Shown one piece after another: positions 5,903 to 52,047 of a DNA stretch of 64,000 nt. Each line of letters opens with the position of its first letter. Within the stretch, counting starts at the first letter, position 1. The stretch covers positions 150,970,001 through 151,034,000 of the forward strand of contig NC_082707.1 in the NCBI RefSeq assembly GCF_030144855.1, in the 5' to 3' direction. Below the pieces are notes generated by a model. It had not been told where the DNA came from and did not search any database. It saw nothing but the letters and a program-made list of their open reading frames with translations. The stretch comes from Hypanus sabinus (taxonomy: Eukaryota). A program made the position numbers and the translations under genes.

Positions 5903-8451
5903 TCCTCTTTCTTAATGTTTATATGCTCAACCTTTTCAGTCCACAGCACGTCATCCTTACGATCACCAAGATCGTTTTCTGTAGTGAATACTGAAGTAAA
6001 GTATTCATTAATTATTGCTGCTATCTCCTCTGGTTCCATACACACTTTTCCACGGTCACACTTGTTTGGTCCTATTCTCTCATGTCTTATCCTCTTGCTC
6101 ATCACATACTTGTAAAATGCCTTAGGGTTCTCCTTAATCCTGCTCACCAAGGCTTTCTCATGGCCTCTTCTGGCTCTACTAATTTCATTCCTAAATTCCT
6201 TCCTGCTAGCCTTATAATCTTCTAGATCTCTATCATTACCTAGTTTTTTCAACCTTTCATAAGCTTTTCTTCTATTCGTGGCTAAATTTTCAACAGGCTT
6301 TGTATACCCTGGTTCCAGTATCCTACCATCCTTTCCGTCTTACTGAAACGTACCTATGCAGAATACCACACAAATATCCCTTGAGCATTTGCCACGTTTC
6401 TGCTGTACAGTTCCCTGAGAACATCTGTTCCCAATTTATGCTTCCAAGTTCCTGCTGATAACTTCATATCTCCTCTTATTCCAATTAGGCATTTTACTAA
6501 CTTGTCAGTTCCTATCCCTCTCCAATGCTATGGTAAAGGAGATAGAATTGCGATCATTATCTCCAAAATGCTCTCCCACTGAGAGACCTGACACTTGACC
6601 AGGTTCATTTCCCAATGCAAGATCAAGCACAGCCTCTTACCTTATAGGTTTATCTACATATTGTGTCAGGAAACATTCTTGAACATACCTAAAACTCCAC
6701 CCCATCTGAACCCCTTGCTCTAGGGAGATGCCAAACAATATTTGGGAAATTAAAATCTCCCACCACAACAGCCCTGTTATTATCACACCTTTCCAGAATC
6801 TGTCTCCCTATCTGCTCCTTGATGACCCTGTTACTATTGGGAGGTCTATAAAAAACACCCAATAGAGTTATTGACCCCTTACTACTCCTATCTTCCACCC
6901 ACAGAGACTCAGTAGACAATCCCTCCATGACATAACTCCTTTTCTGCAGCTGTGACACAATCTTTGACTGGCAGTGGATTGTCCCACCTCTTTTGCCACC
7001 CTCCCTGTCCTTTCTGAAACATCTAAAGTCTGCAACTCTAAGTAACCATTCCTGCCCCTGAGTCATCCAAATCTCTTTAATGGCCACAACATCAGCTCCA
7101 AGTACTGATCCACGCTCTAAGCTCGTCTGCTTTGTTCATGATATTTCTTGCATTAAAGTAGACGCATCTCAAACCATCGGTCTGAGCACATCTCTTCTGC
7201 ATCACCTGCCTATCCTCCCTCTCGCACTGTCTCCAAGCTTTCTCTATTTGTGAGTCAACTGCCCCTTCCTCCATTTCTTCAGTTCCATTCCCACCTCCCA
7301 GCAATTCTAGTTTAAACTCTCCCCAATAGCATTAGCAAACCTCCCTGCCAGCATATTGGTTCCCCTGGTATTCAAGTGCAAACCATCCATTTTGTACAGG
7401 TCACACCTGCACCAAAAGAGGTCCAAATGATACAGAAATCTGAATCCCTGTCCCCTGCTCCAATCCCTCAGCCATGTATTTGTCCTCCACCTCACTCTAT
7501 TCCTATACTCATTGTTGTGTGGCATAGGCAGTAATCCCAAGATTACTACCTTTGAGGTCCTGCTTCTCAACTTCCTTCCTAACTCCCTGTAGTCTGTTTT
7601 CAGGATCTCCTTCTTTCTCCTACCTGCGTCATTGGTACCAATATGTACCACAATCTCTGGCTGTTCACCTTCCCACTTCTGGATATCGTGGACACGATCA
7701 GAAACATCTCGGACCTTGGCACCTGGGAGGCAAACAACCATCGGTATTTCTTTCCTGCATCCTCAGAATTGCCTGTCTGACCCCCTGACTATATCACTGC
7801 TGCCATCCTCTTCTTTCCCTACGCTTCTGAGCCACAGGGCCAGACTTTGTGCCAGCCACTGTTGCTTCCTCCAGGTAGGTCATCCGCCCCCCCCTCCCCC
7901 AACAGTACTCAAACAGGAGTACTTATTGTTAAGTGGTCAGCTACAGGGCTACTGTCTAGTAACTGACCCTTGCCCTTCCCTCTCCTGACTGTTACCCACT
8001 TATCTGTCTCCCAAGGCCACGGTGTGGACTACTTGCCAATAGCTGCTCATTATCAACTCCTTGCTCTCCCTGACCAGATGAAGATCATCGAGCTGCAGCA
8101 CCAGTTCCCTAATGTGGTCCCTAAGGAGCTGCACCTGGTGCAGATGTGGCCTTCTGAGAGGCTGGGAGTCTCCTGGACTACCTACATCTGACACCTAATA
8201 CGGAACACTGGCCTTGTGGTCATACTTCCTGTTTCTATTCTATAGTATTAGTGTACCTCACCTTGACACATTATTGCCGAAGCCCTGTTGAGCCAAAGCC
8301 GTCCTACTCTGTCTACCTCTACTCCATCGCCTATTCCTCTGACACCCACTCTATAAAGCTGTCTCCATTTTAAACTCTTCCTGCAGTCTAACTCATGATA
8401 TTCACATGCATATGCAGTCGTTCCTTGATCAAACCACCAAAGGAAAAATGA

Positions 8452-8652
8452 CATACACAAAATGCTGGTGGAATGCAGCAGGCCAGGCAGCATCTATAAG
8501 AAGAAGTACAGTTGACGTTTTGGGCGAAGGGTCTCGGCCCGAAACATCGACTGTACTTCTTCCTATAGATGCCGGCTGGCCTGCTGCGGTCCACCGGCAT
8601 TTTGTGTGTGTTGCTTGAATTGCCAGCATCTGCAGATTTCCTCATGTTTGCG
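8452..8652. mobile_element. Penelope-derived fold-back mini-element (subfamily A) in the CR1 5' UTR
   Basis: ~70-bp inverted arms around 'gaagggtctcggcccgaaacatcgactg' plus a ~40-nt 3' extension; TSD aaaggaaa(a/t)atga (8439-8451 / 8653-8665). Confidence 0.85.
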
Positions 8653-11353
8653 AAAGGAAATATGATGTTTTTCTACTCTTCCTGTCGGTCTAACTCGCTG
8701 ACGTCCACACACCTGCACAGCCATTCCTCGATGCCAATATTGCAACATGCTTCAAGCTATTAGCATTGCTGTGTGGTTTGGTACCCTTCAATTGTAAGTG
8801 ATAAGAGTGAGCTCCTAGGAACAGTGCCCAAACTTGTAACCGGGTAGCAGTCATCACTGGAATTTCCTTCTTGGGATTGAAGATCGACACAAGGGGTTGG
8901 TGACCTGTCACTACTGTAAACCTTTGCCTCTACAGGAGGTGGTGGAACATGTTTATTCCCCATTATAGAGCAAGGGCCTGTCGGTCAATCTGAGCGTCGT
9001 TGCATTCTGCGCTCGTCAGTGATTTTGAAGAAAACACTTTCGGGTGTTCAGATCCATCTTTCATAATGTGTGACAAACGGCTCTAATGCCATGAGCAGAC
9101 GCATCACACAACAGTCTGATGGGCATGGATAGGTCATAATGGGTGAACAATTCATCAGATGTTATTAGTCTCTGTTTCCTTAAAAGCTCTTTCACATCTT
9201 TCTGACCATTGCCACTTGCTCCTATCTGTAACAGTGCATTCAATGGGTGCAGCACTGTAGCAATGTTTGGGAGAAACCTGTGGTAGTAGTTTACAAGCCT
9301 AAGTGTGACCTGATTTGTGACACAGTCTCCAGATTGATTGCCTGTAGCACTGCCTCAATGTTCTTGTGTCTTATGTAAGCCATGCTTGTCAATGGCATGT
9401 CCAGGATATGAGATTTTGTTCTTGAGAAACTCACATTTCTCTCTCGTTGCACACAGACCACACTCATGCAGCTTTGTAAGCACTTCAGCAAGGTTCTGGA
9501 GCTCCTCTTCATCATTCTTGCCACTGATGATGATGTCATCAAGGTAATATCATGTTCCTGGGGGATCTTAGAGACCTTGGTCTATTGCTCTTTGCTGGAA
9601 CTGATGCGAATCCAAAGAGGAGATGATTGCACTGGAGCAGTACCTTGCATGTGTTGATTGTGAGAGCTCCTTGCTTGCTGCTCCTCAATCTCCATTTGCA
9701 GACAGGCTTGTGACAAGTCAATCTTTGAAAATCACTTCCAAAGATGCAAAACTGTCTTCTATTTGTGATAGGAGATATGGTACAGTACACAGCACAAGGT
9801 TGATGCTCAACTTGAAATTTCCACATTTGCCAATGGCTTCAGCCTTCCCTTTTTGATCACCTGGATAACAGGCATGGCCCAATCCTTCTACTGAACCTTA
9901 GAGAGAATTTCAAGCCTCCAAGCTCTGTAGTTCAGCATCCATTTTAGTACATAATGCATAAGGCACTCGATGTGTTCTGTGGAATCTTGGTGTTGCGGTT
10001 TCATCCAGTTCAATTCTGGCCTTCATGCCTTTGAGTTTACCGATTCCCTTTTCAAACACTTTCTCATTAGCAGTAAGCAGCTGTGCCAGTCCCTGGTTCG
10101 TGCTACCATTTGGACTGGCGTTGCCTGTTGCTGCAATGCTAAGAACTTTGATTGTATGGAAGTCTAGTTGGAATTTTCTCTACCATTCATGTCTGAAAAG
10201 TGCTGACCCTCCACGTTTCAGTACATAAAGCTCTAACTGCAATGTTTGGTCTCCACAGGTCACATTTATTTTCAGTTTACATTTGGGAGACATTTTTTTG
10301 CTCATTTAAGTCTTTAGCATCACCAAAGTCTTCTCTAATGGTATCTTAGGAAACATTCTGTTGTCAGTCTCTAGAATTGTGGACAAAGCTGACCCTGTAT
10401 CCAGCTCCATGTTCAGTTTTACACCAGACACATCTATTGTGAGCTAGATGATTTTGTGATCTGCTTCAGTTGTACTCTACAGTTCCAGGGATGACAGTTC
10501 ACCTTTTCTGTCTCTATGTTATTTAATTCTGTTTTACATTCAGTAACTTCATGCATTTGCTTAGTTTTGTGTTTCAGCCTATTCACTCAGCTGTGCTTTT
10601 TGTCCCTTTATGTTACATTGTCTGTGACTTTTTCTTTGAACCAAGTCATTTGCATCATTGGAAAATTTGCCTCATTGCTAACATTCGCATTTCAGATTCT
10701 AACCTCCTTTTCTGTAGTTCTGTTGCATCCTTTGCTGCAGTCTCTAGTGATATTGTATTGGTCAATTCCTGTTCTAAACTTAGGTTTCTTTCAGATATTA
10801 GCATCTTTTAACCGCTTAGACTATGCATGTCACATACAAGCCTGACCAGTAATGCATCAAAAAGTCTATCTCTAAAGTCACAGTACTGGGAAAGTTTGCA
10901 CAATTCTGCAATGTGTTCAGAAATGCTTTCATCTTTTGACTGGTTCCTTTTATAAAATCTAGATCTCTCAACTATTACTAAGGATTTAGGGTGCAGGTGA
11001 AAATTTCATCGAACATCTTGCTTGCTGGCTTTTCAGGGTTAATAAGTTGCGTAAGAGACTTTACATCTTTGCACCATTATGCAAAGAAGTATAGGGGCTT
11101 TCTTTTGCTTCCTCACAATGTTCATGTTACTGTACAGTTCCATCCTCTTGATATATGAATCTCAACCTTCATTAGCGCCATCAAATTTGTCAACTTTCCC
11201 ACGTTATTTTCACTTTCAATTCAGTGTGCCTTTCTCTGTTACTCAGCCATTTCTTCAGCATTCCATACTGTTTACCTCTCGCTGTTTGATCCTGAAACTG
11301 TTGGTGCAGTACCTAATATTTCCTGACATTTGGGTTCGTACTTGTCGCCAATT

Positions 11354-13807: not shown

Positions 13808-15715
13808 AGCAACACACAGAAAATGCTGGAGAAACTCAGCAATCAGGCAGCATCTATGGAGGGGTATAAACAATCAATGTTTCAAGGTGAGACCTTTCAT
13901 TGGGACTGGAAGAGAAAAGGGTCAGAGGCCAGAATAAGGTGCTGGGGGATGGAGAAGGAGCACCAGTTGGCAGGTGATAAGTGAAACCAGGTGAGAGGAA
14001 AAGTGAAATGACAAGCTGGGAGTTGGTAGGTGGAAGATGTAAAATAATGAAGAAGAAAGAATCCAATAGGAGATGACAGTGATGGAGGGTTGATGAGCAG
14101 GTGAGAGGGTAAACAGAAACGGTAATGGAAAAAAGAGAGGCGGGGGAAAGGGAGTAATTAGCAGGTTAGATAAAACATTTTTTCTAGCATCAGGTTGGAG
14201 GCTGCCCAGATGGACTATGAGATGTTGCTCCTTCAACCTGCATTTGACCTGAATCATAGTACAGGAGGCCATGGAGAGACAAGTCACAATTGGAATGGAA
14301 AGACAAATTGAAATGGGTGGCCATCATAAAATCCTGTTTTTCTAGTAGACTGTGTGCAGTTGCTCGACAAGGTAGTTACCCAATCTCTGTTAGGTCTAAA
14401 TGATGTGGAGGAGACTCCAGTTAGAGAATCAGATACAATAGATAGCCCTGACAGACTTGCAGGCAAAGTGTTGTCTCAGCTGCTAGGACTGTTTGAGACC
14501 CTGCATTGTGGTCAGGAAGGTGATGCAGGGGAAGGAGTAGCATTTGGCATGCTTGCAGAGATAATCAGAATCAGAATCAGGTTTATTATCACCGTCATGT
14601 GTCGTCAAATTTATTAATTTAGCAGTAGCAGTTCAATGCTATACATAATATAGAAGAAAAAAGTAAGTAAATCAATTATAGTATACGTATACTAAATAGA
14701 TTAAAATTGTGCAAAAACAGAAATAATATATATTAAAAAAGTGAGGTAGGGTTCACAGGTTCAATATCCATTTAGTAATCAGATGGTAGAGGGGAAGAAC
14801 CTGTTTCTGAATTATTGAGTGTGTGCCTTCAGGCTTCTGCTCTCCTACCTGATGGTAACAGTGAGAAAAGGGCATGCCCTGGGTGCTGGGGGTCCTTAAT
14901 AACGGACGCTGCCTTTTGACTAAATTACAATCCTCGGCAGCTTCTTTCAGTCCTGTGCAATCGCCCTCCACCACCAAACCCCGCCACCCCCCATCATACC
15001 AGACAGTGATGCAACCTGTCAGAATGCTCTCCATGGTACATCTATAGAAGTTTGTGAGTGTTTTTGCTGACATACCAAATCTCTTCAAACTCCTAATAAA
15101 GTATAGCCGCTGTCTTGCCTCTTTATAACTGTATTGATATGTTGGGACCAGGTTAGGTTCACAGAAATCTTGACACCCAGGAACTTGAAGCTGCCCGCTC
15201 TCTCTACTTATGATCCCTCTATGCGGATTGGTATGTGTTCCTTTGTGTTGCCCTTCCTGAAGTCCACAATCAGCTCTTTCATCTTAATGGTGCTAAGTGC
15301 AAGGTTGTTGCTATGACCCCACTCCACTAGTTGACATATCTCGCTCCTGAACACCCTCTTGTTTCAGCCTGAGTTTCTACCAACAATGGTTGCATCATCA
15401 GCAAATTTATAGATGGTATTTGAGCTATGCCTAGGCACACAGTTATGAGTATAGACAGAGTAGCGCAGTGGGTTAAGCGCACACACCTGAGGTGCTCCAG
15501 TGTTGATTAGCTGTGAGGAGGAGATATTGTCACCAATCTGCACATATTGTCGTCTTCTGGTTAGGAAGTCAAAGATCCAATTGCAGAGGGAAGTGCAGAG
15601 ACCCGAGTTCTGTAACTTCTCAAAGATAAGTGTCAGGAGGGAGATGAGTAGGGAGCAATAAGAGGACAAAGCAGAAATGATTCCTATGGAAAGCAGAAGG
15701 ATGGGGAAGATTTTA
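13808..15715 (-). mobile_element. Penelope-like element, 3' portion (GIY-YIG endonuclease, 3' UTR, terminal repeat), split by Rex1
   Basis: Minus-strand 'QHFACKSVRAIYCI' and 'RLKEQHLIVHLGSLQPD' match the Penelope GIY-YIG C-terminus. Ends in the same terminal repeat as the fold-back elements, with a decayed hammerhead at ~13872-13910. Appears to resume at ~15625-15715. Confidence 0.85.
14565..15623 (-). mobile_element. Rex1/Babar LINE, 5'-truncated
   Basis: 'SLCNWIFDFLT', 'GAPQVCAL', 'YKFADDATIVG', 'FYRCTMESILTGCITVWY'; (GATTCT)n tail; AGATAA on both flanks (14559-14564 / 15624-15629). Confidence 0.9.
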
Positions 15716-18595
15716 GGGAGATAGAGAGGTTTGGACATGATGTCATAATAACAACCTTTTTTTCAATAAACAAAAGAGCTGGTCATTGACTTCAGAAAAG
15801 GGGACTCCTATCTACATCAAGGTGGTGACATTGGGAGGGTTCTGATCTTCAAGTTTTTTAGGTGTGAATATCACCAATAGCCTGTCCTGGTCCAAACACA
15901 TTGATTTCACAGCCAAGAAAGCTCACCAACTGATTAGCGCAAGAAGTTGAAGATGTTTAGCATGTACCTGTCGACCCTTACCAATTTTTATCAATACATC
16001 ATAGAAAGCTTTATCAAAAACACTGTAATGGGATCTTCAGGCAAACAAACCCAGGCTTGAAGTAAATTTGATACTCAAAATATAAAGTAATAACATGTAT
16101 TTATTTGAAGTACATAACGGAGAAATAACAAATGACTTGGAGCATACTTATTCGAGAGGACTGGAGTACACACAATATTAGTTCACTCAGAGCCCAAATT
16201 CAGGATTCAGCAATGAACGCTAGTCATGACTAACTTAAATAGAGCTCAGGAATCATGTGCGTATTAAAATAAAAACTCAATAAACCAGCAGTCAATGAAC
16301 TGTGTATACTTCTTCACCATGAACAAAATGAGGAGGTGGAGGAGACTTGGAATCAAGAGCCAAGGGACTTTAAAGTACAGATTTAAGGGAGGAAACATGA
16401 AAGGTAGAATGGATACACAGAGTCCATGATAATTGTAGGTGGTATGACAACTGATTGATTCTCCATAGAACTTCTAAATGATCAATGTACTTAGGAGCCA
16501 GTTTCGGAGATTTCACCTCCATAGGAGGATCTTGAGTGGAAAAAGAAACTCACTGGACCAGAGAGAACAAAGGTCTTGGTCGCCTTCGACAATTAGCCTG
16601 ACGCTGCTGCTGCTGGGAGTTGGCTATTAAATTGATCTCACCTTTGACCGTGTCTGCCTGTATCTTTTAACAATCCTATTGGCTGCAGGGACACCCACCT
16701 TGGACACCTGCTCCAGGAATAGAGGAAGACTGTAGCTTATATATTCAAAGTGTGGCATCACAATGGAGGAGTATACAAGATTATTACGTGCAAACTCTGC
16801 CCAAGTAAGGTGGTCACTCCATTTAGTTGGGTATCCTGAAAACAAATTTCATAAGGATCTTTCCAAATTCTGATTCTGTCTGTCCATTGATTTGCAGATG
16901 GAACCCATAGGATAGGATAACCACTACCCTGATGAGTTGACAAAAATCCTTCCACAATTTAGACGTGAATTGTGGACCATGGTCCAAGATGATAACCCAG
17001 TGATAGCCATATATCCAGAAGATATTTCATAACATAAGATCAACTGTCTCTGAAGCATTGGAAAGTTTGGGAGAGGGCCAAAGTGGCATGCCTTTAAGAA
17101 TCATTCCACTACAACCATAATATCATTATTCCCACAGAATGAAGGAAGACCAGTGATAAAGTCCATCAAAATATGAGACCAGGGATGAGTAGGAATAGGT
17201 AAACGTTGTAAGAGACCTTGGGGTAGTGATTTAGATTCCTTATTTTCAGCACATATTTCACATGCCAAAACATAGTCCTTGATGTTTTTGGTTATGCCTG
17301 ATCACCAGAATCACCTCTTAATGAACTTTAATGTTGCAAAATTCCCAGGTGCCCAGTGTCTGAGGCATAACCTCCACTACAAAAGGTAGGTGGATTGGGG
17401 GAACAAGTACAGGTGTTGTGGTAAATCTATTTCTAATGTTGACGGAAAGCGGCTTCTGCCTCTGGAATCCAATGGAAAGGCCCTGCAGATCTTTTAGTGA
17501 GGTGGTAAGTGGACCTGTGGTAGAACTGAAATTGCAAATGAAGTGACAATAGAAATTGGCAAACCCTAAAAACCTTTGGAGCTGTTTAACCAATGTAGGT
17601 TGAGGCCAATTCTGTACCACTTAGGTCTTCTCAGGGTCCATGTGTAGATCTCCATTAAAACTGACAAATCCAAGAAAAAATACTTTGTGGATGTGGAACT
17701 CACTCTTCTCAAGTTTAATAAAACAGGTATATGTTGAAGAACACTCCATACATATTGAACGTGTTCCTGAAGCAAATGAGAAAAAAAAGGATATTGCCCA
17801 AATAAACAACAAATAAACAATAAATAAACAAAGTGAGTAACCATTTTTCAGAGCATGGTGCTAATAAAATTTTGAAAGACCACTGGAGTATTTACTAAGC
17901 CGAATGGCATCACCAGATATTCATAATGTACAGTGGAAGCTGTGAAGGTCAACTTCCATTCATCTCCCTCTCAAATCTGGATAAGATCGTAGGCAGTCCA
18001 GAGATCAAGTTTCATGAACAGTGGTGCTCCTTGTAGTAGTTTGAACATCATATTCATAAGATGGAGCGGATACCAGTTCTTTAAAGTAAACTTATTTAGA
18101 CACCTGTAATCAATATATGGTCTCAGTCTGTCATCCTTTTTGGATATAAAACAGAATCCTGCTCTAGCAGGAAAAGTGGATGATCAAATACACCCTGATG
18201 CCATAGCCTCCTTAATATACTCCATCATGGCTGGTCTCTCGACAGTGGATAAGGAACAAAGCCTTTCCCAGGAAGGACAAATACCTGGTAGCACGTCAAT
18301 AGTGCAATCATAGTTTCTATGTGGATGAATTGTTGTGACTCTCTTCTTGCTAAGTACCTCCAGCAAGTCTAAATATTTTGCAGGCACTCTGGGCAACTCA
18401 TTTGACTTAGGAGTCCAGTTCTGAGAAGTCAAAAGGCAACTTAGGACTTACAACTGATGACTCACTGTAATAACAGTAGACATCTTGGAAAATTAGGCTG
18501 CCATCTTGGAAACTCAGGCTTGGGCTTGCCTCTTGGGACATCTGGTTAGCCTTTCAGGATCTCTGATTGGTCTTTCAGAACTGTTTGAAGGACAG

Positions 18596-25614: not shown

Positions 25615-26220
25615 ACAACATATACACAATGCCTGAGGAATTCAGCAGGCCAGACAGCGTCTATGGAAAAGAGTAAACATTCACCGGTTTGGGCTGAGAT
25701 CGTTCATCAGGATTGGAAAGAAAGAGGAAAAGTCAGAATAAGAAGTTGGGGGGAGAGGAGGAAGAAGTACAGGTGGCAGGTGATAGGTGAAACCCGGAGT
25801 GGGGAAGGGGATGAAGTAAAGAAATGGGAAGTTGATTGGTGCAATTCCCCATTCCTGTTTCCCTCACTCAACTTATCTCCTTACTTGTCCATCACCTTCA
25901 TTTGGTGCTCCTTCTCCTTTCCTTTCTTCCATGGTCTTTTATCCTCCCCTATCATATTCCCCCTTCTCCAACCCTCCCCAGATTTTTACTTCACCAGCCC
26001 CCCACTTTCACCTATCACCTACCACCTTCTAATTCTTCCTGGCCTTTCCCAACTTCTTACTCTGAGTTCTCCTTTTTCTTTCCAATTCTGATGAAGAGTC
26101 TTGGCCTGAAACATTGACTGTTTACTCTTCTCCATAGATGCTGCCTGGCCTGCTGAGTTCTTTAGCATTTGTATATGTTGATTTGGATTTCCATCATCCA
26201 AAGATTTTCTTATGTTTGTG
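25615..26220. mobile_element. Penelope-derived fold-back element (subfamily A, long arms including 3' UTR)
   Basis: Inverted terminal-repeat copies at ~25620-25715 and ~26082-26180; hammerhead core CTGATGA...GAAA at 26088-26111; 'cctacaa' on both flanks. Confidence 0.85.
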
Positions 26221-34733: not shown

Positions 34734-34925
34734 AACACACACAAAATGCTGGAGGAACTCAACAAGCCAGGCAACGTCCATGGAAAAGAGTAAACAGTCA
34801 ATATTTCAGGACGAAACCCCTTCATCAAGACACTTTTCCACAGATTCTGCCTTGCCTGCTGAGTTCCTCCAGAAAATTGTATGTGTTGTTTCAATATTCC
34901 AACATCTGCACATTTTCTCTTGTTT
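34734..34925. mobile_element. Penelope-derived fold-back mini-element (subfamily A)
   Basis: Inverted arms 'ctggaggaactca' / 'tgagttcctccag'; hammerhead-like motif on the minus strand at 34795-34831; 15-bp TSD gt(g/a)atatttc(c/t)tcag. Confidence 0.85.
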
Positions 34926-35723: not shown

Positions 35724-38172
35724 TGTAATTATATGTGTACATAATAAAAAACTTCAGTTCCCAGCATGCAATATGGGGCAGTTCAGCAGGAAACTGGAAA
35801 GGTGTTGGTGAACTGGGAAAACGTGCTTAAGTGCAGAGCTGGAAGCCATAATTGTTAACAAATGTGCTAGCCCACAGAAGATTTGTGTTTTTATCAAGAA
35901 AAAATATACCTTGTTAGGAAAGAGACACTACGCTGCGATGTAGAAATGTTGCCAGCACACTGCCTTGAAGAAATTGAGGTGAAAGCCTAAAAATCCCCTC
36001 AATGGATAAAGTAAGTCCTCCCACAGCTATGCTGTTTACCAGCAACCTAACTGATACATGGAAATTCTTCAATCAGTGATTCAATATATATATGCCAGTA
36101 AGTAGATCTGGAGGCGCCGAGGGAAAATTGAAATTTATTTTTCTACACATAATTGTCAAAGGTGCTTTGTACATCTACAATACCTTTCAAATTGATGCGA
36201 AGAGAATTTGAATTGGACACCCTGATGACAATATTTGAGGAGTATTTTGACTCATGTAAAACATTGCATTTGAAAGATATAAATTCTTTTCCTGTGAATA
36301 GAAATAAGGTGTCAGCTTTGACCAAAACTTAGCTGACCTTTACACACTGAGTAAATCCTGAATTTGGAGATTTGAGATACTCACTAGTCAGAGACAAAAT
36401 AGTTTGTGGAATCCCAGATATGGACTCAGAGATAGATGGCTCCATGAAAAAGATTTAATACTAGAAAGAACTGTGAGTATTTACGGAGCAGTGGAGACCA
36501 CATGAGCACAAGCTAAGGAGCTGCACAGAGCAGAAACAACAGAGCATATCATGAAAACAGAGTGACAGAGCACAAGGCATTTCCCAAATCAACAGCAAAA
36601 CAAAGAGGTAAGCTCAAACAGCAAATGCAACAAAGATGGAGGTAGGCACATCCCAAAGACGTGTCCTGCTCAGGGAAAGTCCTGCAATAGTTATAGGAAG
36701 AAGAATCATTTTACGAAGAGCTCAAAACTGGGGCTACCATGAGGAAGGTGCACACTTCTGGTGAGGAAATTGTGAAAGTTTTGTAGATTCTCGGCAGACT
36801 GCTGGTGCTGGTAAGACAGAATAGATTGTTCCAGTGACTGTGAATGAGACAGTAATTCCATTCAAGTTGGACATCAGATCCCAGGTGTTGTCCATCAATG
36901 ATTACAAGACTCTCAAAGTAAAGAGCAAGATTTACCCAGTGACGTTTAAAGTACCTGGCTATTTTGGACAGAATGTTCCAGTAAAATGAGGCTGTATAAT
37001 GACCTTCAGGCACAAGGGACAGCACCTAATGGCACAGCTGCCAAATACTGAAAAGCGAAGACAGCCAGTACAAGGTCTGACTGCATACAAAAGGCTTAAC
37101 GATTTTCACCATGGCTTCACAGACCAAAGATGATTAGGCAACATTCAAGAATGAATACACAGATGTCTTTGAGGTGCTTGAATGCTTACCTGATGTAACT
37201 TGAGAAATGTGTAACATAATCCTTCAGAGCCACAGAGAGGTTATGCAAGGACAAGAACTTTACCTTCTTTAGACATCCATACCAAGCTACACTGCCATGA
37301 CATTCAGGATGCTTGTGCTAAACAAAGAGAACATGAAGAAGAAGTCACCAGTCTTGCTTCCACGTCATGCAGGTTTGGGTCAAAATCTGTCTCTCAAATA
37401 CTTCCAGTTAGAGAATAGAAATCAGAAATATCCTCTCCAAAGTTGAAGAGGGAAAATAAAAAGGAAGCTGGGGAGACCACACAGAACCAAAGGCCAGAAA
37501 GCAGCAACCATTCAACATAATTCAACAGGAAAAGTTGTTATCTATGATACACAGTCAAGGAGCTCCGCAAATTGAGACAAATTCAGTGGAACCTTTGCAA
37601 AGACTCACTGATCACCTGGATGTAGTTCAGGGCTCCATTGCAAGGCACATGGAGTGAATTATGGTCACACAGCAGGAACCAAAACAGATGAGCAGGTAGG
37701 ATCTTGGCAGAAAGATATAAAAGAAATGAACACCAAGGTCAAAATTCTCAAATGTACACTGGTATTAATGTAACAAGTGAAATCAAGCCATCTGTGACCA
37801 AAAGAGATCAGTAAGGCACCACAGAGATGGATTGAGAGTGGCTGAGAGAATGGGGTGCTGTATTTGCTCATTACAATTGAAGTTAATGTAACTATCTGTG
37901 TTGGAAAGCATTATGGCTTCTTACAGTTTTATGAGTACATAGTATTGCGCTTTTTTTTGCTTTAAAGGGGAAGATCTGTTTTATGCGTGTACACAATAAA
38001 GAACTTTAGTTCCTAGTTTGCAATGCAGGTATTTCTGCTGGAAATGGAAGGACATTGGTGAACCGGAAGCATGCGCTAAAGTGTTAATCTAGAAGCAATG
38101 ACAGTTAATAAATCTGCTAACATTTGAAAACCCATTTATAGTTTGTCTTCTTTCAAGAATAAACATAACTAT
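35724..38172 (+). mobile_element. Gypsy LTR retrotransposon (provirus C), heavily deleted
   Basis: Similar LTRs ~35724-35910 and 37977-38172; PPT aaaggggaaga at 37964-37974; gag start 'MDKVSPPTAMLFTSNLTDTWKFFNQ' at 36002; knuckle 'CPAQGKSCNSYRKKNHF'; protease 'IPFKLD'. Confidence 0.8.
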
Positions 38173-40400: not shown

Positions 40401-43400
40401 ACATAATACCATAAAACATGAGATATAGGAGTAGAATTACACCATTTGACTAATTGAGTCTGCTCTGCCATTTCATCATGGCTGATCCAATTTTTCTCTC
40501 AGTCCCAATCTCTTACCTTCTCCCTGTATACCTTTGTGCCCTGACAAATCAAGAATCTATAAACCTCTGCCATAAATGCATATAAAGACTTGGCCTCCAC
40601 AACTATCTGTGGCAAAGAATTCCACAGATTCACCACTCTCTGGCAAAACAAATTCCTCCTTAATTCCATTCTAAAAGGGCGTTTATCTATTCTGAGACTG
40701 TGTCCACTAGTCTTAGATTCTCTCACCATAGGAGGTATCCTCTCCACATCCACTCCATTAAGGTCTTTCACCATTCAATAGCTTTCAATGAGGTCACCCC
40801 TCATTCTTCTCAATTCTAGTGAATACAGGTCCAGAACCAACAAATGCTCTTCATATGACAAGCCATTTAATCCTGGAATAATTTTTGTGAATTTCCTTTG
40901 ATCCACCTCCAGTTTCAGCACATCATTTCTGAGATAAGGGTCTTAAACATGCTCACAATACTCCAAGCGAGGCCTCACCAGTGCTTTATAAAGCCTCAAC
41001 ATTGCATCCTTGCTTTTATAGTCTAGTCCTCTTAAAATGAATGCGAACATTGCATTTGACTTCCTCACCACAGACTCAACCTGCAAATTAACCTTTAGGA
41101 AATCCTGCACAAGGTCTCCTAAGTCTGTATGCACCTCAGTATTGTATTTTTCTCCATTTAGAAAACAGTCAACACTTTCATTTCTTCTACAATACAATTA
41201 CCGACACTTTATTCCATCTAACATTTCTTTGCCCATTCTCCTAATCTGTCTAAGTCCTTCTGTAGTCTCTCTACTTCTTCAAAACTACCTGCTGCTCCAT
41301 CTGTCTTCTTATCACTTGTAAACTTTGTAATGAAGCCATCAAATCCATCGTCCAAATCATTGACATTAAAGATAAAATGAATCGGTCCCAACACAGTCCC
41401 CTGTCGAACACCACTAGTCACCGGTGGCCAGTCAGAAAAGGCTCTTTTTATACCCACTCTTTGTTTCCTGCCAATCAATCACTGCGTTATCCATATTTCC
41501 CATAATACCATGAGCAATATACCAATATTTCCCATAATACCATGAGCTCGTAATTGGTTATGCAACCTCAAGTGTGGCATCCTGTCTGAAAATCCAGGTA
41601 CAGAACATCAACCAATTCTCTTTCGTCTATCCTATTTGTTATTTCTTCATAGAATTCCAACAGATTTGTCAGACAAGAGTTTATCTGGAGGAAACCATGC
41701 TGACTATGGACTAGTTTATCATACACCTCCAAGTACCCTGAGACCTTATCCTTAATTATTGACTCCAACATCTTTCCAACCACTGAGGTCAGACTAAAGG
41801 CTGATTTATGGGCTACGCCGCAGCCCTGATTTTCACTTCTGCATAGGTTCTATGCCATAGCAAGCATGCGTTGGTGTGTGCCAAAACGCTAGTTGGCGGT
41901 GGGGTTTCTATGTCACTGTGTTGAGTTTCTTCGTGACAGACATAGACAAGGAAATGCATTTCAAACATTTTCGCATGTTGACAGGTAGATTTAATGATTT
42001 GGTTCTTCTATTTCGCATCAGTGTACAGACATGGTGGAGAAGAAGCAACTGGAAATGCATAGGAGGAAATGCGATGCTACCAAGTGGACCAATCACAGTT
42101 GTTGCAGTCTGCATCACCGCAATGTGTGATGTACCTTTTTGGCAAGGTGTACGTCACCCTACGGTGTAGGGTACACCGTAGGTACGGGATAGGGTATGCA
42201 ACGCAAGAGAATAAATCAGCCTTATCTGCCCTATATTTTCCTTTCCTATGTCTTTCTCCCTTCTTGATGAATGAAGTGACTTTTGTAATGTTCCAGTTTT
42301 TTGGAATCTTTACAGAATCTAGTGATTCTTGAAATATCATTACTAATGGCTCCACGATCTCTTCAGCCACCACTTTCAGAACTCTGGGATGTACACCATC
42401 TGGTCCAGGTGACTTATCTAACTTCAGACCTTTCAGTTTCCGAAGCACCTTCTCTCTAGTTATGGTAACTTCACACACTTCATTCTACCTGACTCCTGGA
42501 ACATCCACCATACTGCTAGTGTATTCCACGGTGAAGACTGTTGCAAAATCCTTATTCAGTTCATCTGCAATGTTGTTGTCACACATTTCTACCTCTTCAA
42601 CATCATGTTCCAGTAGTCTGATATTCACTCTCATCTCCCTTTTACACTTTCTGTATCTGAAGAAAATTTTGGTATCCTTCTCATTATTGGCTAGCTTACT
42701 TTCGTATTGCATCTTTATCTTTTTAATGAACCTTTAATTGCTTTATGTTGTTTTTTAAAAGCCCCTAATCCTTTAATTTCCCACTTATTTTTGCTCTATT
42801 TTATGCCCTCTCTTTGGCTTCAGTGTTGGCTTTGACTTCTCTTGTTAGCCGCAGTTGTGCATTCTTTCCTTTAGAATACGTCTTCCTCTTTCAGATGTAT
42901 ATATCTTCTGCATTCTGAATTGCTTCCAGAAATTCCAGCTATTGCAGCTTTGCCTTCATCCCTGACAGTGTACTTCTCCAATTAATTATTTGATGCCTAC
43001 GACATCATACCTGCCAATCTGCAATTGTGTTGCAAATTCATCTACCTTATTGCATGCAAATACATCACCTCAGTCCTGTATTCACCCTCTTTGATTTTGT
43101 CCGCCTTTTTATGTTGCAACTCATCCTGTTGACTGTAATTTTGCCCTATCAATATCTTCTCCTCACTACACATTGCCTCTGTTTGTAAACCAGCTACCTT
43201 ATCTTCAGCACTATTATCTGTCTTTCCTATGAAACTTCTTGCATTGAAATGTTGGCAGCTCAGGATACTAGTCACGCCATGCTCAACGTTTTGACTCCTA
43301 ATATGGTCTGAGATCTTACCAGCATCTGCTGCTGCAACCTCTCCATTAACTGTTCTGGGCACTCTGCTTCCCACCCCCCTGCAACTCTTGTTTAAACTCC

Positions 43401-44615
43401 ATGATGCAGCTTTAACAACCGTCCTGCTTGGATATTTGTCCCTGTCCAGTTCAGGTGCGAACCATCCCTTCTGTACAGGTCCCGTGTTCCCTGGAAGAGA
43501 TTCCACTGGTCCAGAAATCTTATGCCCTCCCTCCTACGCAGACTCTTTAGCCACATATTAAACTGTAAAATCTTCCAAGTTCTGGCCTCACAAGCACCTG
43601 GCAGGGATAGCACTCCTGAGATTGCAACCGTGGAGGTCCTGTCCTTTAATATAGAACCAAGCACCCAGATCTCCCTATACAGAGCCTCTTCACTCACCCT
43701 ACCCATGTCATTGGTACCTACATGCACCATTACTTCAGGCTGTTCACTCTCCCAATTAAGAATATTGAGGACTTGATCCGAGATATCCCAACCCTGGCAC
43801 CCAGGAGGCAATAGACCATCCCAGAATCTTGTTCTCACCCACAGAATATCCTGTTCATTCTCCTAACTAATGAATCCCCTATCAACACAGCTCACCTCTT
43901 CTGCTCTTTTCGTTTCTGAATCACAGAGGCAAACTCTGCCAGAGACTTGACCACTGTGCCTTTCCTCTTTTAGGTCATCCCTTCGACAGTATCCAAAATG
44001 ATATATGTGTTGCTGAGGGGGATGGTCACAGGGGTAATCTGCACTGGTTCATTAACCCATTTCCCCTTCTTGACCATTTTCTTAACTTCCCCAGTTTTCT
44101 GTGTCCTGCACTTTGGGTGTATCTGCCTCTCTTTATGTCCTATCTATCTCCCCTTCAGCCTTCCGAATGATCTGGAGTTCATCCAATCCCAGCTCCAGCT
44201 CCTTAAAAAGATTTGTTAGAAACTGTACTGGATGCACTTCTAGCAGTCTTCTGGCCTTCCCACATCCTGCAAGTGCTGCATTTCACTATCCTGCCTGGCA
44301 TCTCTACTGTCCTAGCTGAGCAGATATAGAGAAGAGAAGGAAAAAAAGAAAACTTAAGCTTTTCTTTCCTTTGCTTTCTCTGAATGAAGCCTCTCCTCCC
44401 GGAAGCCTCGAAGAGCTAAAGCCTCAAGATCACACTTTGACCCTGGCCGCTCAGTTGACATCTGTTGCGCTTGCCCCTGCTCTCCTTAATTCACTCTTAC
44501 TAATCAGCTCCAGATACCGAATAGTGTCTGGTCAAAGCTCTTTTTCAGTGTTGCAACCTACTACTGCATCTTATCCTTCGGGTGTGGACCTGACTGAAGT
44601 CCCCTGCTCTCCAAG
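40401..44615 (-). mobile_element. CR1 LINE (chimeric lineage), near full length with most of APE deleted
   Basis: RT ('SCLTNLLEFYEE', 'RPRLEYCE'), esterase ('VMVHVGTNDMG', 'DGSHL'), ORF1 N-terminus ~44100-44290 and 5' UTR to ~44615. Confidence 0.92.
41798..42222 (+). mobile_element. PIF/Harbinger non-autonomous element (MITE) inserted in CR1
   Basis: 12-bp TIR AGGCTGATTTAT / ATAAATCAGCCT; TAA / TAT flanks (3-bp TSD, one mismatch); transposase remnant 'DKEMHFKHFRMLTGRFNDLV'. Confidence 0.85.
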
Positions 44616-46834
44616 CGTCTGATCCCCTATTGTGCATCTGATTCTACACTGTAATTTTTCTTAACTTATTCCATGTATGAAGAAACAAACACCACATAGC
44701 CTGATCAATCTTTAATCTTGTTTTTCTTATCTAAAACCATTAACTTTTGAACAGTTTGCTTTGATGTAATAGAAAATGATACAGAGCAACAAATCTGTAA
44801 TTTCCTTTTGACCAACAGAATTGTTAATCATGCACAAACAGAGTCTCCCTCAGTTCACAGAACTGATGGTGGTGGCCATCCCAATCCAGCTAAGGCTGTT
44901 TCCTCCAAGGACATTCTACTCACAGTGGGATAGTAGATTCATTTATAATATCAGGCTTCTAGACAGATAATATTTAAAGCAGGCACATCAGTAACATTAA
45001 AAGCCAACTAGGTAAGTATATGGATTGGAGAGGTTTAGAGGGCTTTTGGCAAATTGGTGGGACTAGCAGACTGGGTAACACAGACAGCATGAACAAGTTG
45101 GACTGAAGAGACTTTCTCCATGCAATCTGACTTTATGACTTGCTACTTCTTGGATACGTTGACATTGGAAGCTTGGGTGACTTTTGTCCCATGGATCATT
45201 GAAGAGCTAGCTGTTACAGAAAGTGTAGGAAGTGCTAAAGAGACAAGTCACTGTCATGCTTGGAGGATAAGCATGCAGAACAACACCTTCATTTATCCTT
45301 GGTTAATCTTGTGAGGTGATTAAACTTCATCCAGATGCTCCTGCTCAGTGGTGCTTGAATCCAAAAGACTGCAAATGCTTTGAAGCAAATCCCTAATCTG
45401 GTTTTTCAAACAACTCTTCTTACCATCTAAAAATACATGCTTGGTGAGTTCTTCTTAGTAAATGTGAACAATTAATTCACATGCCGATGGTATAAGTGTT
45501 AAATTGTCAATTAGAGAAAAAGCTTTTTCCATTTATTTATCTAGGATATTGACTAGATAATACCCTTTTTTGGACAAAGGATTAATTTCTGTCACTGTCT
45601 ATTCATTTGTTAATGTATTGAATTAAGAAGCATAGATGCTGCAATTTAGAGTGTAATTTGAGATCTTCTTTCCCTTTAGCAAATTGATGAAGATGAAGGA
45701 CACAATTGTCATTTCAGTTGAATGATTGCTGCTGAGAATTGAGAGGTTAGGAGTTTCTACAGCTTCATTCTGCAAAAACAAACATCAAATTAAAAAGGTT
45801 TGACCTCTGTTGTGGTGGTACAGGATCTTCGTATTCTTGTGAGGTTGGAGAAAGATCAAATTGTTGTTAATAATCAGTAGTGATTAATACCAATGTGGGA
45901 CCTTTCATCCTACAAGTGGTTCTTTTAGCAACTTTCATTTTATTACAATGAAATTATTTAGACATGATGTAACATAATAATGTCTATCAGTTATGATAAT
46001 ATTATCGTAGAAATCAACTATCTGGAGCAAAGTAATTTTTCCTTTCAAGCTATCGATATGCTGGCTTGTACTGTTAAGAACTTGCTCTTCACTCAGAGCA
46101 TTTTGCACAACTGTCAATTGGAATTATCTGAACTTTGCTTCTCTACCCCTTCTTTTTCATAAACTAATTATGCATAGAAATACTGAACTAGGCATTTCAT
46201 GATTAACTTTTAATGAAAGACTGTTGTTCTTCCGTCACAATCTCATTTGCCATAGCAACAAGAATAGGCTAATAAGTCTTCTTGAAAGTCCAGCCTGATT
46301 CTTTGATTTGAACCATCAAGCTCAGTCAATACTGTTGAAACAATTACTGGACTTCTGTGCATTTAAGTAATATTCAGCTAAAATCAGAAGCAGCTGACAA
46401 TCATGTGCTAAATACCTTGTACATCTTATCTAGTTTATAGTGTACATCTGGATTCCTGTTTCCAGTCAAGAGCTCAGTGAAGAAAATAAAATACATTTAG
46501 CACAAAATTGACACAAAGGGAACAAAGGCTTTGATACATCTGAATGTATATTGACTGATTTATAGGAGTTGTCAGCAAGTTCAAATGTCTCAGATCTGAC
46601 ACATTCACAAAAGTTAACTTATATTGGTTGTGTTTTGTGTAGAATTTCCATCAATTTTCCAAACCCTCACTATGGGAAATGGGAGAAGTAAATTATAATA
46701 TCAGTAGACCTTGAATGACCCGAGCACATCCTGCATACATGTGCTATTGCCACTGAGAGATAATATATCAGAAGTGGTATTTAGTAATTTTTTTTTTCCC
46801 TGGTTTAAAATGGTGCTAATGAAGCGCTGTGACT

Positions 46835-46886
46835 ACTTACCTGTAGCAAACAAAACAAAGAACACTAATATCTTCTTTATTAGTCA
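46835..46886 (-). promoter_or_regulatory. Candidate recursive splice site (3' splice site immediately followed by a 5' splice site)
   Basis: Minus strand: TGACTAATAAAGAAGATATTAGTGTTCTTTGTTTTGTTTGCTACAG|GTAAGT. Confidence 0.5.
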
Positions 46887-46989
46887 CACTCTTTCTGGTA
46901 ATGATCACTGCAATAAATAGCCTGTAACTTCCCTTTTGAAGTTGAGCTTTTGAACCACCTCTATGACCTGGCATTTTTGCAGTGTAAAC

Positions 46990-47778
46990 TGGAGTTTTGA
47001 AGGTGCAGGATGGTTGCGATGTGGCGTTTACAAACTGAGTTGAGGTGCTGGACTCAGGCTTGAGAGTAGGGAATCAGCCAAGTTTGGCCATTGCTGGAGG
47101 AGACATGGAGTTCATTTGATGTGGCAGCACGGAGGCGAGGCAAGCAGAGGCAATGCAGATTCAAGGTGGTAGGGCGTGGGACATGGCTCAAGAGGGAGGA
47201 AAGACCTGAGGTTTGATCAACTTAAGCGCTGAGCTGAATTAGATACAGGCAGATATGAGCTGGCAGGGCCCAGTCCTGGGAGTGTCTTGAAGTGACAGGG
47301 CTCAGGTTTGGAAACAAGGGACAATCTGAGGTTTGATCAACTTAAGCACGGACCAAACTGAAATGGTCAGGTATGGGTTGAAGCAAAGCAGCAAAGTCCA
47401 AGTCCAAGAGCGAGGAACAACGCAAGTTTAGAAGGTTTAATTGAGCCAAATTGAAGAGTCAGGGTTTCGGGGCTGGAGCTGAGGGACGGGCCAGTTAAGC
47501 TTGCTGTTCTGCAAAGTTTATTTATCTCTGCACTGAATTGAGGCCATGGCCTGCGACTAACGGGCTCCTGAATCGGCTGCATTGATGACAAGCTTCAAGG
47601 CTATGGACTCACATTCATAAACTTCAATCGTTTGTATTCTTTTGTTGTTTGTACAATGTCTTTTTTCTGCACGTTGGGTTCTGTTTGGGAATCTTTGGTC
47701 TTTGGCTGCCTGTAAGGAGACGAATCACCATATTATATATCGTATACAAACTTTGATATGATATGTACTTTGAATTTT
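46990..47778 (+). mobile_element. Non-autonomous retroposon with Rex1-like 3' tail
   Basis: GC-richer 5' part with direct repeat 'tgaggtttgatcaacttaagc' (~47207 and ~47327); 3' end resembles the Rex1 tail at 30320-30400; no ORF remnant. Confidence 0.55.
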
Positions 47779-50714: not shown

Positions 50715-51900
50715 ATAAAAAAAAATTACGTAATTAAAAAAAACACAGAGAAAGCTACACTAGGCTATAGACCTACACTGGACTGCATAAAGTGCACAAA
50801 AACAGTGCACACATTACAATAAATAATAAACAGGACAGTAGGGCAAGGTGTCAGTCCAGGCTTCGGTTATTGAGGAGTCTGATGGCTTGGGGGAAGAAAC
50901 TGTTATATACTCTGTTCGTAAGAGCCCAAGTGCTTTGGAGCCTTTTCCCAGATGGCAGGAGGGAGAAGAGATCGTATGAGGGGTGCATGGGGTCCTTCAT
51001 AATGCTGTTTCCTCTGCAGATGCAGCGTGTAGTGTAAATGTCTATGATGGCAGGAAGAGAGACCCCGATGATCTTCTCAGCTGACCTCATTATCTGCTGC
51101 AGGGTCTTGTGATCCGAGATGGTGCAATTTCTGAACCAGGCAGTGATGCAGCTGCTCAGGATGCTCTCAATATAACCCCTGTAGAATGTGTTGAGGATGG
51201 GGGTGGGAGATGGACTTTCTTCAGCCTTCACAAAAAGTAGAGACGCTGCTGGGCTTTCTTTGCTATGGAGCTGGTGTTGAGGGACCAGGTGAGATTCTCC
51301 GCCAGGTGAACACCAAGTAATTTGGTGCTGTTTACGATCTCTACCGAGAAGCCATCAATGTTCAGCTGGGAGTGGTCGCTCCTTGCCCTCCTGAAGTCTC
51401 TTTTGTTTTTTTCATTTTAAGAGACAGATTGTTACATCTGCACCAGTCCGTTAGCCGCTGCACCTCCTCTCTTGAAGCTGACTCGTCTTTTTGCTGATGA
51501 GATGCACCACAGTTGTGTCATTGGCGAACTTGATGATATGGTTCGAGCTGTGTGTTGCAGCACAGTCGTGGGTCAGCAGAGTGAACAGCAGTGGACTGAG
51601 CACGCAACCGTGGGGAGCCCCCATGCTCAGTGTGATGGTTTTGGAGATGCTGCTTCCGATCCGGACTGACTGAGGTCTCCCAGTCAGGAAGTCTAGGATC
51701 CAGTTGCAGAGGGAGGTGTTCAGGCCCAGTAGGCTCAGCTTTCCAATCAGTCTCTGAGGGATGATTGTGTTGAATGCTGAACTGAAGTCTATGAACAGCA
51801 TCTGAATGTATGTGTCTTTTTTGTCCAGGTGGGTTAGGGCCAGGTGGAGGGTGGTGGCAATGGCGTCATCTGTTGAGTGTTTGGGACAGTATGCAAACTG
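50715..51900 (-). mobile_element. Rex1/Babar LINE, 5'-truncated, relatively well preserved
   Basis: '[47 protein letters not shown]' and 'FYRGYIESILSSCITAWF..SFFPQAIRLLN'. Confidence 0.92.
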
Positions 51901-51904
51901 GAAG

Positions 51905-52047
51905 GGTCAACGTTTTGGGTCAAGACCCTTCGTCCTGACGAAACGTTAACTGCTCCTTTCAACAGATGCTGCCCGACCTGCTGAGTTCATCCAGCTTTTT
52001 TGTACATCTTGATTTGACCACAGCATCTGCAGTGTACTTTGTGTTTA
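51905..52047. mobile_element. Penelope-derived fold-back remnant (subfamily B)
   Basis: Right arm and tail nearly identical to 5834-5900; hammerhead pieces on both strands at the inversion junction. Confidence 0.8.

What the first reader, a model, noticed from the sequence alone, without database searches (positions are those of the whole stretch)
46835..46886. Candidate recursive splice site (zero-length exon) on the minus strand: hints at a hidden giant intron
Seen: in non-repetitive sequence the minus strand reads TGTTCTTTGTTTTGTTTGCTACAG|GTAAGT (junction 46841/46840). This is a U-rich tract plus CAG acceptor fused directly to a perfect GTAAGT donor, with a branch-point-like GACTAAT ~40 nt upstream. 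Established: this is the signature of vertebrate recursive splice sites, described in very long introns of neural genes (e.g. CADM1/2, ANK3, OPCML, NTM, ROBO2, HS6ST3, PDE4D, NCAM1). Inference: the window has no recognisable host exons, so it may lie inside one such intron, and this could be a cartilaginous-fish orthologue of a known RS site or a new one. Caveats: AG dinucleotides lie between the GACTAAT and the tract. An ordinary 67-nt exon (from tttattgcag|TGATC; open as IITRKSVTNKEDISVLCFVCY) ending at the same donor is an alternative reading.
Basis: partly seen in the sequence, partly recalled or inferred. Interest (0 to 1): 0.7.

Follow-up and report, generated by a model that had tools for sequence, protein, structure and literature searches.

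The report
Splice-site-like motif, probably a chance match
The acceptor-plus-donor splice motif is really there and is the best of its kind in this window, but hundreds of equally good ones are expected by chance in a genome this size and nothing testable here shows it is used, so it is most likely an ordinary look-alike.

Summary
The minus strand does read TGTTCTTTGTTTTGTTTGCTACAG|GTAAGT, with the junction at 46841|46840. The GACTAAT, the intervening AGs and the 67-nt open alternative exon are all as described.

On a rough splice-site score it is the best of 564 AG|GT junctions in the window. About 0.016 sites this good are expected per 64-kb window. That means hundreds to over a thousand per ray-sized genome, against roughly ten efficient recursive sites known in human.

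Nothing else supports recursive splicing:
- No host exon, CpG island, strand skew or RNA family was found in the window. Every ORF that matched a Pfam family is LINE retrotransposon debris.
- The downstream donor that vertebrate recursive splicing needs to define an "RS-exon" is missing. The best one within 400 nt scores below the random median.
- The only good branch-point motif has three AGs between it and the acceptor.

The 67-nt exon reading has a weak acceptor and no protein relatives.

The decisive tests could not be run.

Verdict: most likely a chance motif (about 0.75). A cryptic or ordinary exon donor is about 0.13, and a true recursive site about 0.07. The scan flagged another AG|GTAAG site in this genome before (s1-187762); its follow-up saw only normal splicing.

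The parts
46841..46864 (-). U/G-rich tract plus CAG: 3' splice-site-like half (TGTTCTTTGTTTTGTTTGCTACAG). 13 of the 16 positions from -20 to -5 are pyrimidines, with 3 Gs interspersed.
   Evidence: sequence; rough 3'ss score 7.99, in the top 0.15% of all AGs in the window.
46835..46840 (-). GTAAGT: consensus 5' splice-site-like half, directly abutting the CAG.
   Evidence: rough 5'ss score 8.57, in the top 0.014% of all GTs in the window.
46879..46885 (-). GACTAAT, the only YTNAY branch-point-like motif in the 70 nt upstream (A at -40 = 46880). It is followed by AGs at -36, -33 and -26.
46841..46907 (-). Alternative reading: a 67-nt open exon from tttattgcag|TGATC to the same donor. Its length is not a multiple of 3.
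   Evidence: acceptor score 0.45, only in the top 9% of AGs; no credible protein relative of the enclosing 78-aa ORF.
46665..46670 (-). Best candidate for a downstream donor that could define an RS-exon (ATA|GTGAGG, 170 nt after the junction). It is weak.
   Evidence: score 1.85, below the median (2.35) of the best donor found within 20-400 nt of random positions.

Best explanation
This is a fortuitous juxtaposition of a T/G-rich tract, a CAG and a consensus GTAAGT in unique, heavily CpG-depleted non-coding DNA between LINE fragments. It has no dedicated function. If the minus strand happens to be transcribed, the motif would act at most as a pseudo or cryptic splice site. The sequence and its rarity per window are shown. 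The lack of function is inferred from base rates and from the missing accessory features.
For: Chance expectation is 0.016 sites of this quality per 64-kb window on both strands. That gives roughly 250-1,700 per 1-7 Gb cartilaginous-fish genome. About 20 would be expected among the 1,360 windows of this genome already read (window count). Efficient intronic RS sites number about 10 in human (PMC6224609). No downstream donor of even average quality lies within 400 nt. All three frames close within 12 codons after the junction. No Pfam-recognisable host exon was found: every ORF that matched a family is LINE-derived, with RVT_1, Exo_endo_phos_2, Lipase_GDSL_2 or ALKBH8_N. Splice-flanked ORF candidates look TE-derived or random. 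There is no CpG island and CpG o/e is 0.23. There is no G/T strand skew and no Rfam family.
Against: It is clearly the best combined AG|GT site in the window, and both halves are close to consensus. A site this strong would probably be used at some level if it sits in the sense strand of a long intron. The absence of exons and CpG islands across 64 kb fits a giant intron as well as it fits intergenic DNA. The scoring matrices are rough, and MaxEntScan-type models were not available.
Confidence: 0.75

Rival explanations
1. It is a true recursive splice site (zero-length or cryptic RS-exon) in a very long minus-strand intron. The tract plus CAG is first spliced to the upstream exon, and the reconstituted exon|GTAAGT donor then removes the rest of the intron.
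For: The motif matches (Y)nNCAG|GTAAGT perfectly and is the best in the window. The window has no exons or CpG islands, which is compatible with a giant intron. Stops in all frames after the junction fit a cryptic or poison RS-exon.
Against: Vertebrate RS starts by defining an RS-exon through a downstream 5'ss (PMC6224609). The best donor within 400 nt scores 1.85, below the random median. Branch point A at -40 is followed by AGs at -36, -33 and -26. No host gene, strand or transcription evidence exists. Base rates favour chance by roughly 10-100 to 1.
Confidence: 0.07
2. It is the 5' splice site of an ordinary or cryptic exon of an unannotated minus-strand transcript, such as a lncRNA, a poison exon or an alternative exon. 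The exon could be the 67-nt one (46907-46841) or a longer one starting at 47093, 47186 or 47233.
For: CAG|GTAAGT is a perfect donor. The 67-nt stretch is open. Acceptor-like AGs with modest scores of 2.1-2.9 lie 253, 346 and 393 nt upstream.
Against: The 67-nt exon's acceptor is weak (score 0.45, top 9% of all AGs). The enclosing 78-aa ORF has no Pfam family. Against 1.84 billion representative proteins it gave only repeat-inflated spurious hits, to repetitive hypothetical proteins from a stick insect, an alga and two unnamed records. No promoter-type CpG island lies upstream.
Confidence: 0.13
3. It is the 3' splice site of a conventional exon that merely begins with GTAAGT. This is the 'annotated RS-exon' type, whose internal donor is normally repressed by the exon junction complex.
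For: Thousands of annotated human exons begin with a 5'ss-like sequence (PMC6224609). The acceptor half is strong.
Against: All three frames are closed within 12 codons, and no decent donor ends such an exon within 400 nt.
Confidence: 0.03

Closest known systems
Vertebrate recursive splice sites with cryptic RS-exons (CADM1/CADM2/ANK3 type; Sibley et al. 2015 as summarised in PMC6224609, PMC5126111 and PMC10156609)
   Same: A juxtaposed polypyrimidine-type tract, CAG acceptor and GTAAGT donor. Stop codons follow the junction in every frame.
   Different: No recognisable downstream 5' splice site to define the RS-exon. The host intron, strand, transcription and conservation are all unknown. Known saw-tooth-supported sites lie in introns of 172-875 kb (PMC10156609, Table 1).
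Drosophila ratchet points (Duff et al. 2015; PMC8605326, PMC6110457)
   Same: The same zero-length-exon sequence logic (acceptor fused to donor).
   Different: There are about 197 in fly long introns and they are strongly conserved. This is a different lineage, and most fly sites also have a donor within 100 nt downstream (PMC6224609), which is absent here.
Pseudo-exons / cryptic splice sites in deep intronic or intergenic DNA (e.g. PMC8819188, PMC7175933)
   Same: Strong consensus-like splice motifs that arise by chance in non-coding sequence, without conservation or regular use.
   Different: None that could be shown here. This is the class I file it under.

Membership tests
Vertebrate recursive splice site | Juxtaposed 3'ss and 5'ss motif, (Y)nNYAG|GTRAGT | tested here: met
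   TGTTCTTTGTTTTGTTTGCTACAG|GTAAGT, the best of 564 AG|GT sites in the window.
Vertebrate recursive splice site | Lies on the sense strand inside a long intron of a transcribed gene (172-875 kb for saw-tooth-supported human sites, PMC10156609) | not testable with these tools
   No genome coordinates, annotation or vertebrate genome collection were available. No host exon, CpG island or strand skew was found in the window, which fits either a giant intron or intergenic DNA.
Vertebrate recursive splice site | A downstream 5' splice site defines an RS-exon (PMC6224609) | tested here: not met
   the best donor within 400 nt is ATA|GTGAGG at +170, score 1.85, below the random-position median of 2.35. 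A rough PWM was used, so a weak functional donor is not excluded.
Vertebrate recursive splice site | Usable branch point with an AG-free zone up to the acceptor | tested here: inconclusive
   the only YTNAY is CTAAT (A at -40), with AGs at -36, -33 and -26. A degenerate UnA branch at -26 remains possible.
Vertebrate recursive splice site | Exon-to-RS junction reads, lariats and saw-tooth coverage in total or nascent RNA | not testable with these tools
Vertebrate recursive splice site | Evolutionary conservation of the AG|GTAAG core (PMC5126111; bioRxiv 10.1101/2025.08.14.666599) | not testable with these tools
   No elasmobranch or other vertebrate DNA collection is available. Blank look-ups carry no weight.
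Ordinary coding exon | Good acceptor, open frame, and protein-level similarity to known proteins | tested here: not met
   The frame is open over 67 nt. The acceptor score is only 0.45. No Pfam hit. phmmer against 1.84 billion representatives gave only repeat-inflated spurious hits.

The most novel reading that the evidence does not exclude
The site is a working recursive splice site in a giant intron of a minus-strand (probably neural) gene of a stingray. That would be the first described in a cartilaginous fish, and it might be orthologous to one of the few human or zebrafish sites, implying conservation across jawed vertebrates.
Probability: 0.06. Interest if true: 0.55.

Novelty: not a real feature. 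Interest (0 to 1): 0.12.

Why it matters
If it were real, it would extend recursive splicing of giant introns to cartilaginous fishes and give a deep comparison point for the handful of conserved vertebrate sites. As it stands, it shows that a perfect AG|GTAAGT motif alone does not predict recursive splicing. Such motifs are expected by chance hundreds of times in a large genome. The informative features are host intron, RS-exon donor, conservation and RNA intermediates, and here they are either absent or untested.

Tried and rejected
- **U1 snRNA pseudogene on the + strand** (ACTTACCTG is the U1 5' end). Rejected: the following bases do not continue as U1, and Rfam found no family in the window.
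- **Tract derived from a microsatellite or LINE/SINE tail.** TRF found no array. There is no tRNA-like element. 45.8-48.0 kb has no similarity to the rest of the window. Genome-wide repetitiveness could not be tested.
- **Host strand from transcription-associated G/T skew.** None was found after removing LINE-rich stretches.
- **Promoter upstream on the minus strand.** There is no CpG island anywhere in the window.
- **Host exons.** Pfam scans of 50 ORFs gave only LINE domains. Splice-flanked open-frame candidates look TE-derived or random.
- **Exact look-ups of four window ORFs in public assemblies**, to fetch same-species or related contigs. None is on record.
- **phmmer of the 78-aa ORF over the putative exon.** Four hits, all to internally repetitive hypothetical proteins: a stick insect, an alga and two unnamed records. 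Their scores come from summing many marginal stretches, so they are not homologues.
- **Exact 24-mer scan of metagenome contigs.** 0 hits.
- **Earlier-findings look-ups by sequence and relatives.**

Full report
**Observation.** The minus strand of the window reads ...gtgactaataaagaagatattagTGTTCTTTGTTTTGTTTGCTACAG|GTAAGTAGtcac, with the junction between 46841 and 46840.
- GACTAAT lies at 46885-46879, with its branch-type A at -40.
- AG dinucleotides lie between it and the tract, at -36, -33 and -26.
- A 67-nt open stretch (46907-46841) follows tttattgcag and ends at the same donor.

The window has no N runs, is uniformly upper case, and contains no tRNA genes or Rfam families.

**Is it more than chance?** The 9-mer YAGGTAAGT alone is not: it occurs 2 times in the window against 0.93 expected from shuffles. 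I then scored all 564 AG|GT junctions on both strands with rough acceptor and donor matrices. These were approximate vertebrate frequencies from memory, so they serve for ranking only.
- The site is the best in the window: 16.56 against 12.86 for the runner-up.
- Its acceptor half is in the top 0.15% of all AGs, and its donor half in the top 0.014% of all GTs.
- Convolving the empirical score distributions of the two halves gives an expectation of 0.016 sites this good per 64-kb window.

So the site is unusual for one window but not for a genome.
- At 1-7 Gb, the typical range for cartilaginous fishes (my own knowledge), 250-1,700 such sites would arise by chance.
- About 20 would be expected in the 1,360 windows of this genome already read by the scan (window count).

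**Context.** The window is dominated by LINE debris.
- Large within-window repeats pair 40.4-44.4 kb with 53.9-57.0 kb, and 11.8-13.4 kb with 60.1-62.0 kb.
- Every ORF that matched a Pfam family is LINE-derived, on both strands, with RVT_1, Exo_endo_phos_2, a GDSL-esterase-type ORF1 or ALKBH8_N.
Another note indicates that the genome is a stingray (s1-236310).

The 44.4-49.8 kb stretch that holds the site shows none of this.
- It has no similarity to the rest of the window.
- It has no tandem array at the tract.
- Its ORFs have no Pfam match.

No host gene could be found.
- A scan for open frames flanked by good splice sites gave 11 candidates. They look TE-derived or random.
- There is no CpG island, and CpG o/e is 0.23.
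- After removing LINE-rich parts there is no G/T strand skew that would hint at transcription of either strand.

That fits intergenic DNA as well as it fits a giant intron.

**Recursive-site architecture.** In vertebrates, recursive splicing begins by defining an RS-exon, which needs a 5' splice site downstream of the RS site. In fly too, most sites have such a donor within 100 nt (PMC6224609).
- Here the best donor within 400 nt is ATA|GTGAGG at +170 (G at 46670). It scores 1.85, below the median (2.35) of the best donor found within 20-400 nt of random positions in this window.
- All three frames close within 12 codons after the junction. That excludes a coding exon starting here, but it would fit a cryptic poison RS-exon.
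- The only YTNAY motif in the 70 nt upstream is CTAAT at -40. The AG at -26, which is 14 nt past it, would compete as an acceptor. A degenerate branch at -26 is possible.

One defining feature is therefore met (the motif), one is not met (the RS-exon donor) and one is inconclusive (the branch point).

**The ordinary-exon alternative.**
- The 67-nt exon's acceptor is weak: score 0.45, only in the top 9% of AGs.
- Modest acceptor-like AGs lie 253, 346 and 393 nt upstream.
- The 78-aa stop-to-stop ORF that covers the exon (46840-47073, minus) has no Pfam family.
- In an exhaustive phmmer search of 1.84 billion representative proteins, that ORF gave only four hits. All are internally repetitive hypothetical proteins: one from a stick insect, one from a green alga and two unnamed records. 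Their scores are sums of many marginal 25-40-residue stretches. I treat them as spurious.

A non-coding or poison exon ending at this very good donor remains possible but has no support.

**What could not be tested.**
- No collection of vertebrate genomes is available, so neither the host gene nor conservation could be examined.
- Blank look-ups do not count as evidence. These were the earlier-findings searches by sequence and relatives, the exact-ORF look-ups and a 24-mer scan of metagenome contigs.
- The paper library holds no report of recursive splicing in elasmobranchs.

**Comparison with what is known, and odds.**
- Efficient intronic RS sites number about 10 in human against 197 in fly (PMC6224609).
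- Saw-tooth-supported human sites sit in introns of 172-875 kb, with a median near 550 kb (PMC10156609, Table 1).
- They are conserved (PMC5126111; bioRxiv 10.1101/2025.08.14.666599).
- Broader split-read and lariat surveys find many more, mostly stochastic, sites (PMC10156609).

Chance sites of this quality are expected in the hundreds to thousands. The prior that a random site lies on the sense strand of an intron is about 0.2 (my estimate). The RS-exon donor is missing. From these I put a true recursive site at about 0.07, an ordinary or cryptic exon donor at about 0.13, an exon that merely starts with GTAAGT at about 0.03, and a non-functional chance motif at about 0.75.

A similar AG|GTAAG claim elsewhere in this genome (s1-187762) was followed up with RNA data and showed only normal splicing. 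I did not check that myself.

**Verdict.** The interpretation cannot be decided with the tools available, and the testable evidence leans against it. Interest is low unless mapping and RNA data show otherwise.

Noticed in passing
window 7310-7762 (-) and 43395-43862 (-): LINE ORF1-like frames with a GDSL esterase/lipase domain (Lipase_GDSL_2, also OSK). They lie next to endonuclease and RT fragments, so these are CR1-type elements that carry an esterase ORF1.
   Followed up: partly
window 14756-15283 (-): This ORF matches Pfam ALKBH8_N (E 7e-8) next to an RVT_1 fragment at 15367-15762. It is probably the C-terminal region of a LINE reverse transcriptase rather than a real ALKBH8 exon.
   Followed up: no
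window 8713-8929 (-): An open frame reads ...VVTGHQPLVSIF..., flanked by good splice-like sites. By eye it resembles the RNase H-integrase linker of a Ty3/gypsy-type LTR element. Not tested.
   Followed up: no
window 51828 (+): The second-best AG|GT junction in the window (TGTCTTTTTTGTCCAG|GTGGGT, score 12.86). It lies antisense inside an RT-bearing LINE fragment (RVT_1 at 51454-51906, minus), which shows how such motifs arise in TE debris.
   Followed up: partly
window 37190-37317 (-): A 128-nt open frame with acceptor score 5.5 and donor CAG|GTAAGC (7.6). It is on the same strand as the candidate site and 9.5 kb downstream. It is the best splice-flanked open frame outside recognised TEs. The peptide has no obvious identity and was not searched.
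   Followed up: no
window 8450-8516, 25617-25683, 34734-34800: A three-copy short repeat family (…AATGCTGGAGGAACTCAGCAGGCCAGGCAGC…-like). It is probably a dispersed SINE or TE fragment common in this genome.
   Followed up: no
whole window: CpG o/e is 0.23 with no CpG island in 64 kb. GC content is 35-47%, and no exon was recognised. This is a gene-poor, heavily CpG-depleted stretch.
   Followed up: yes
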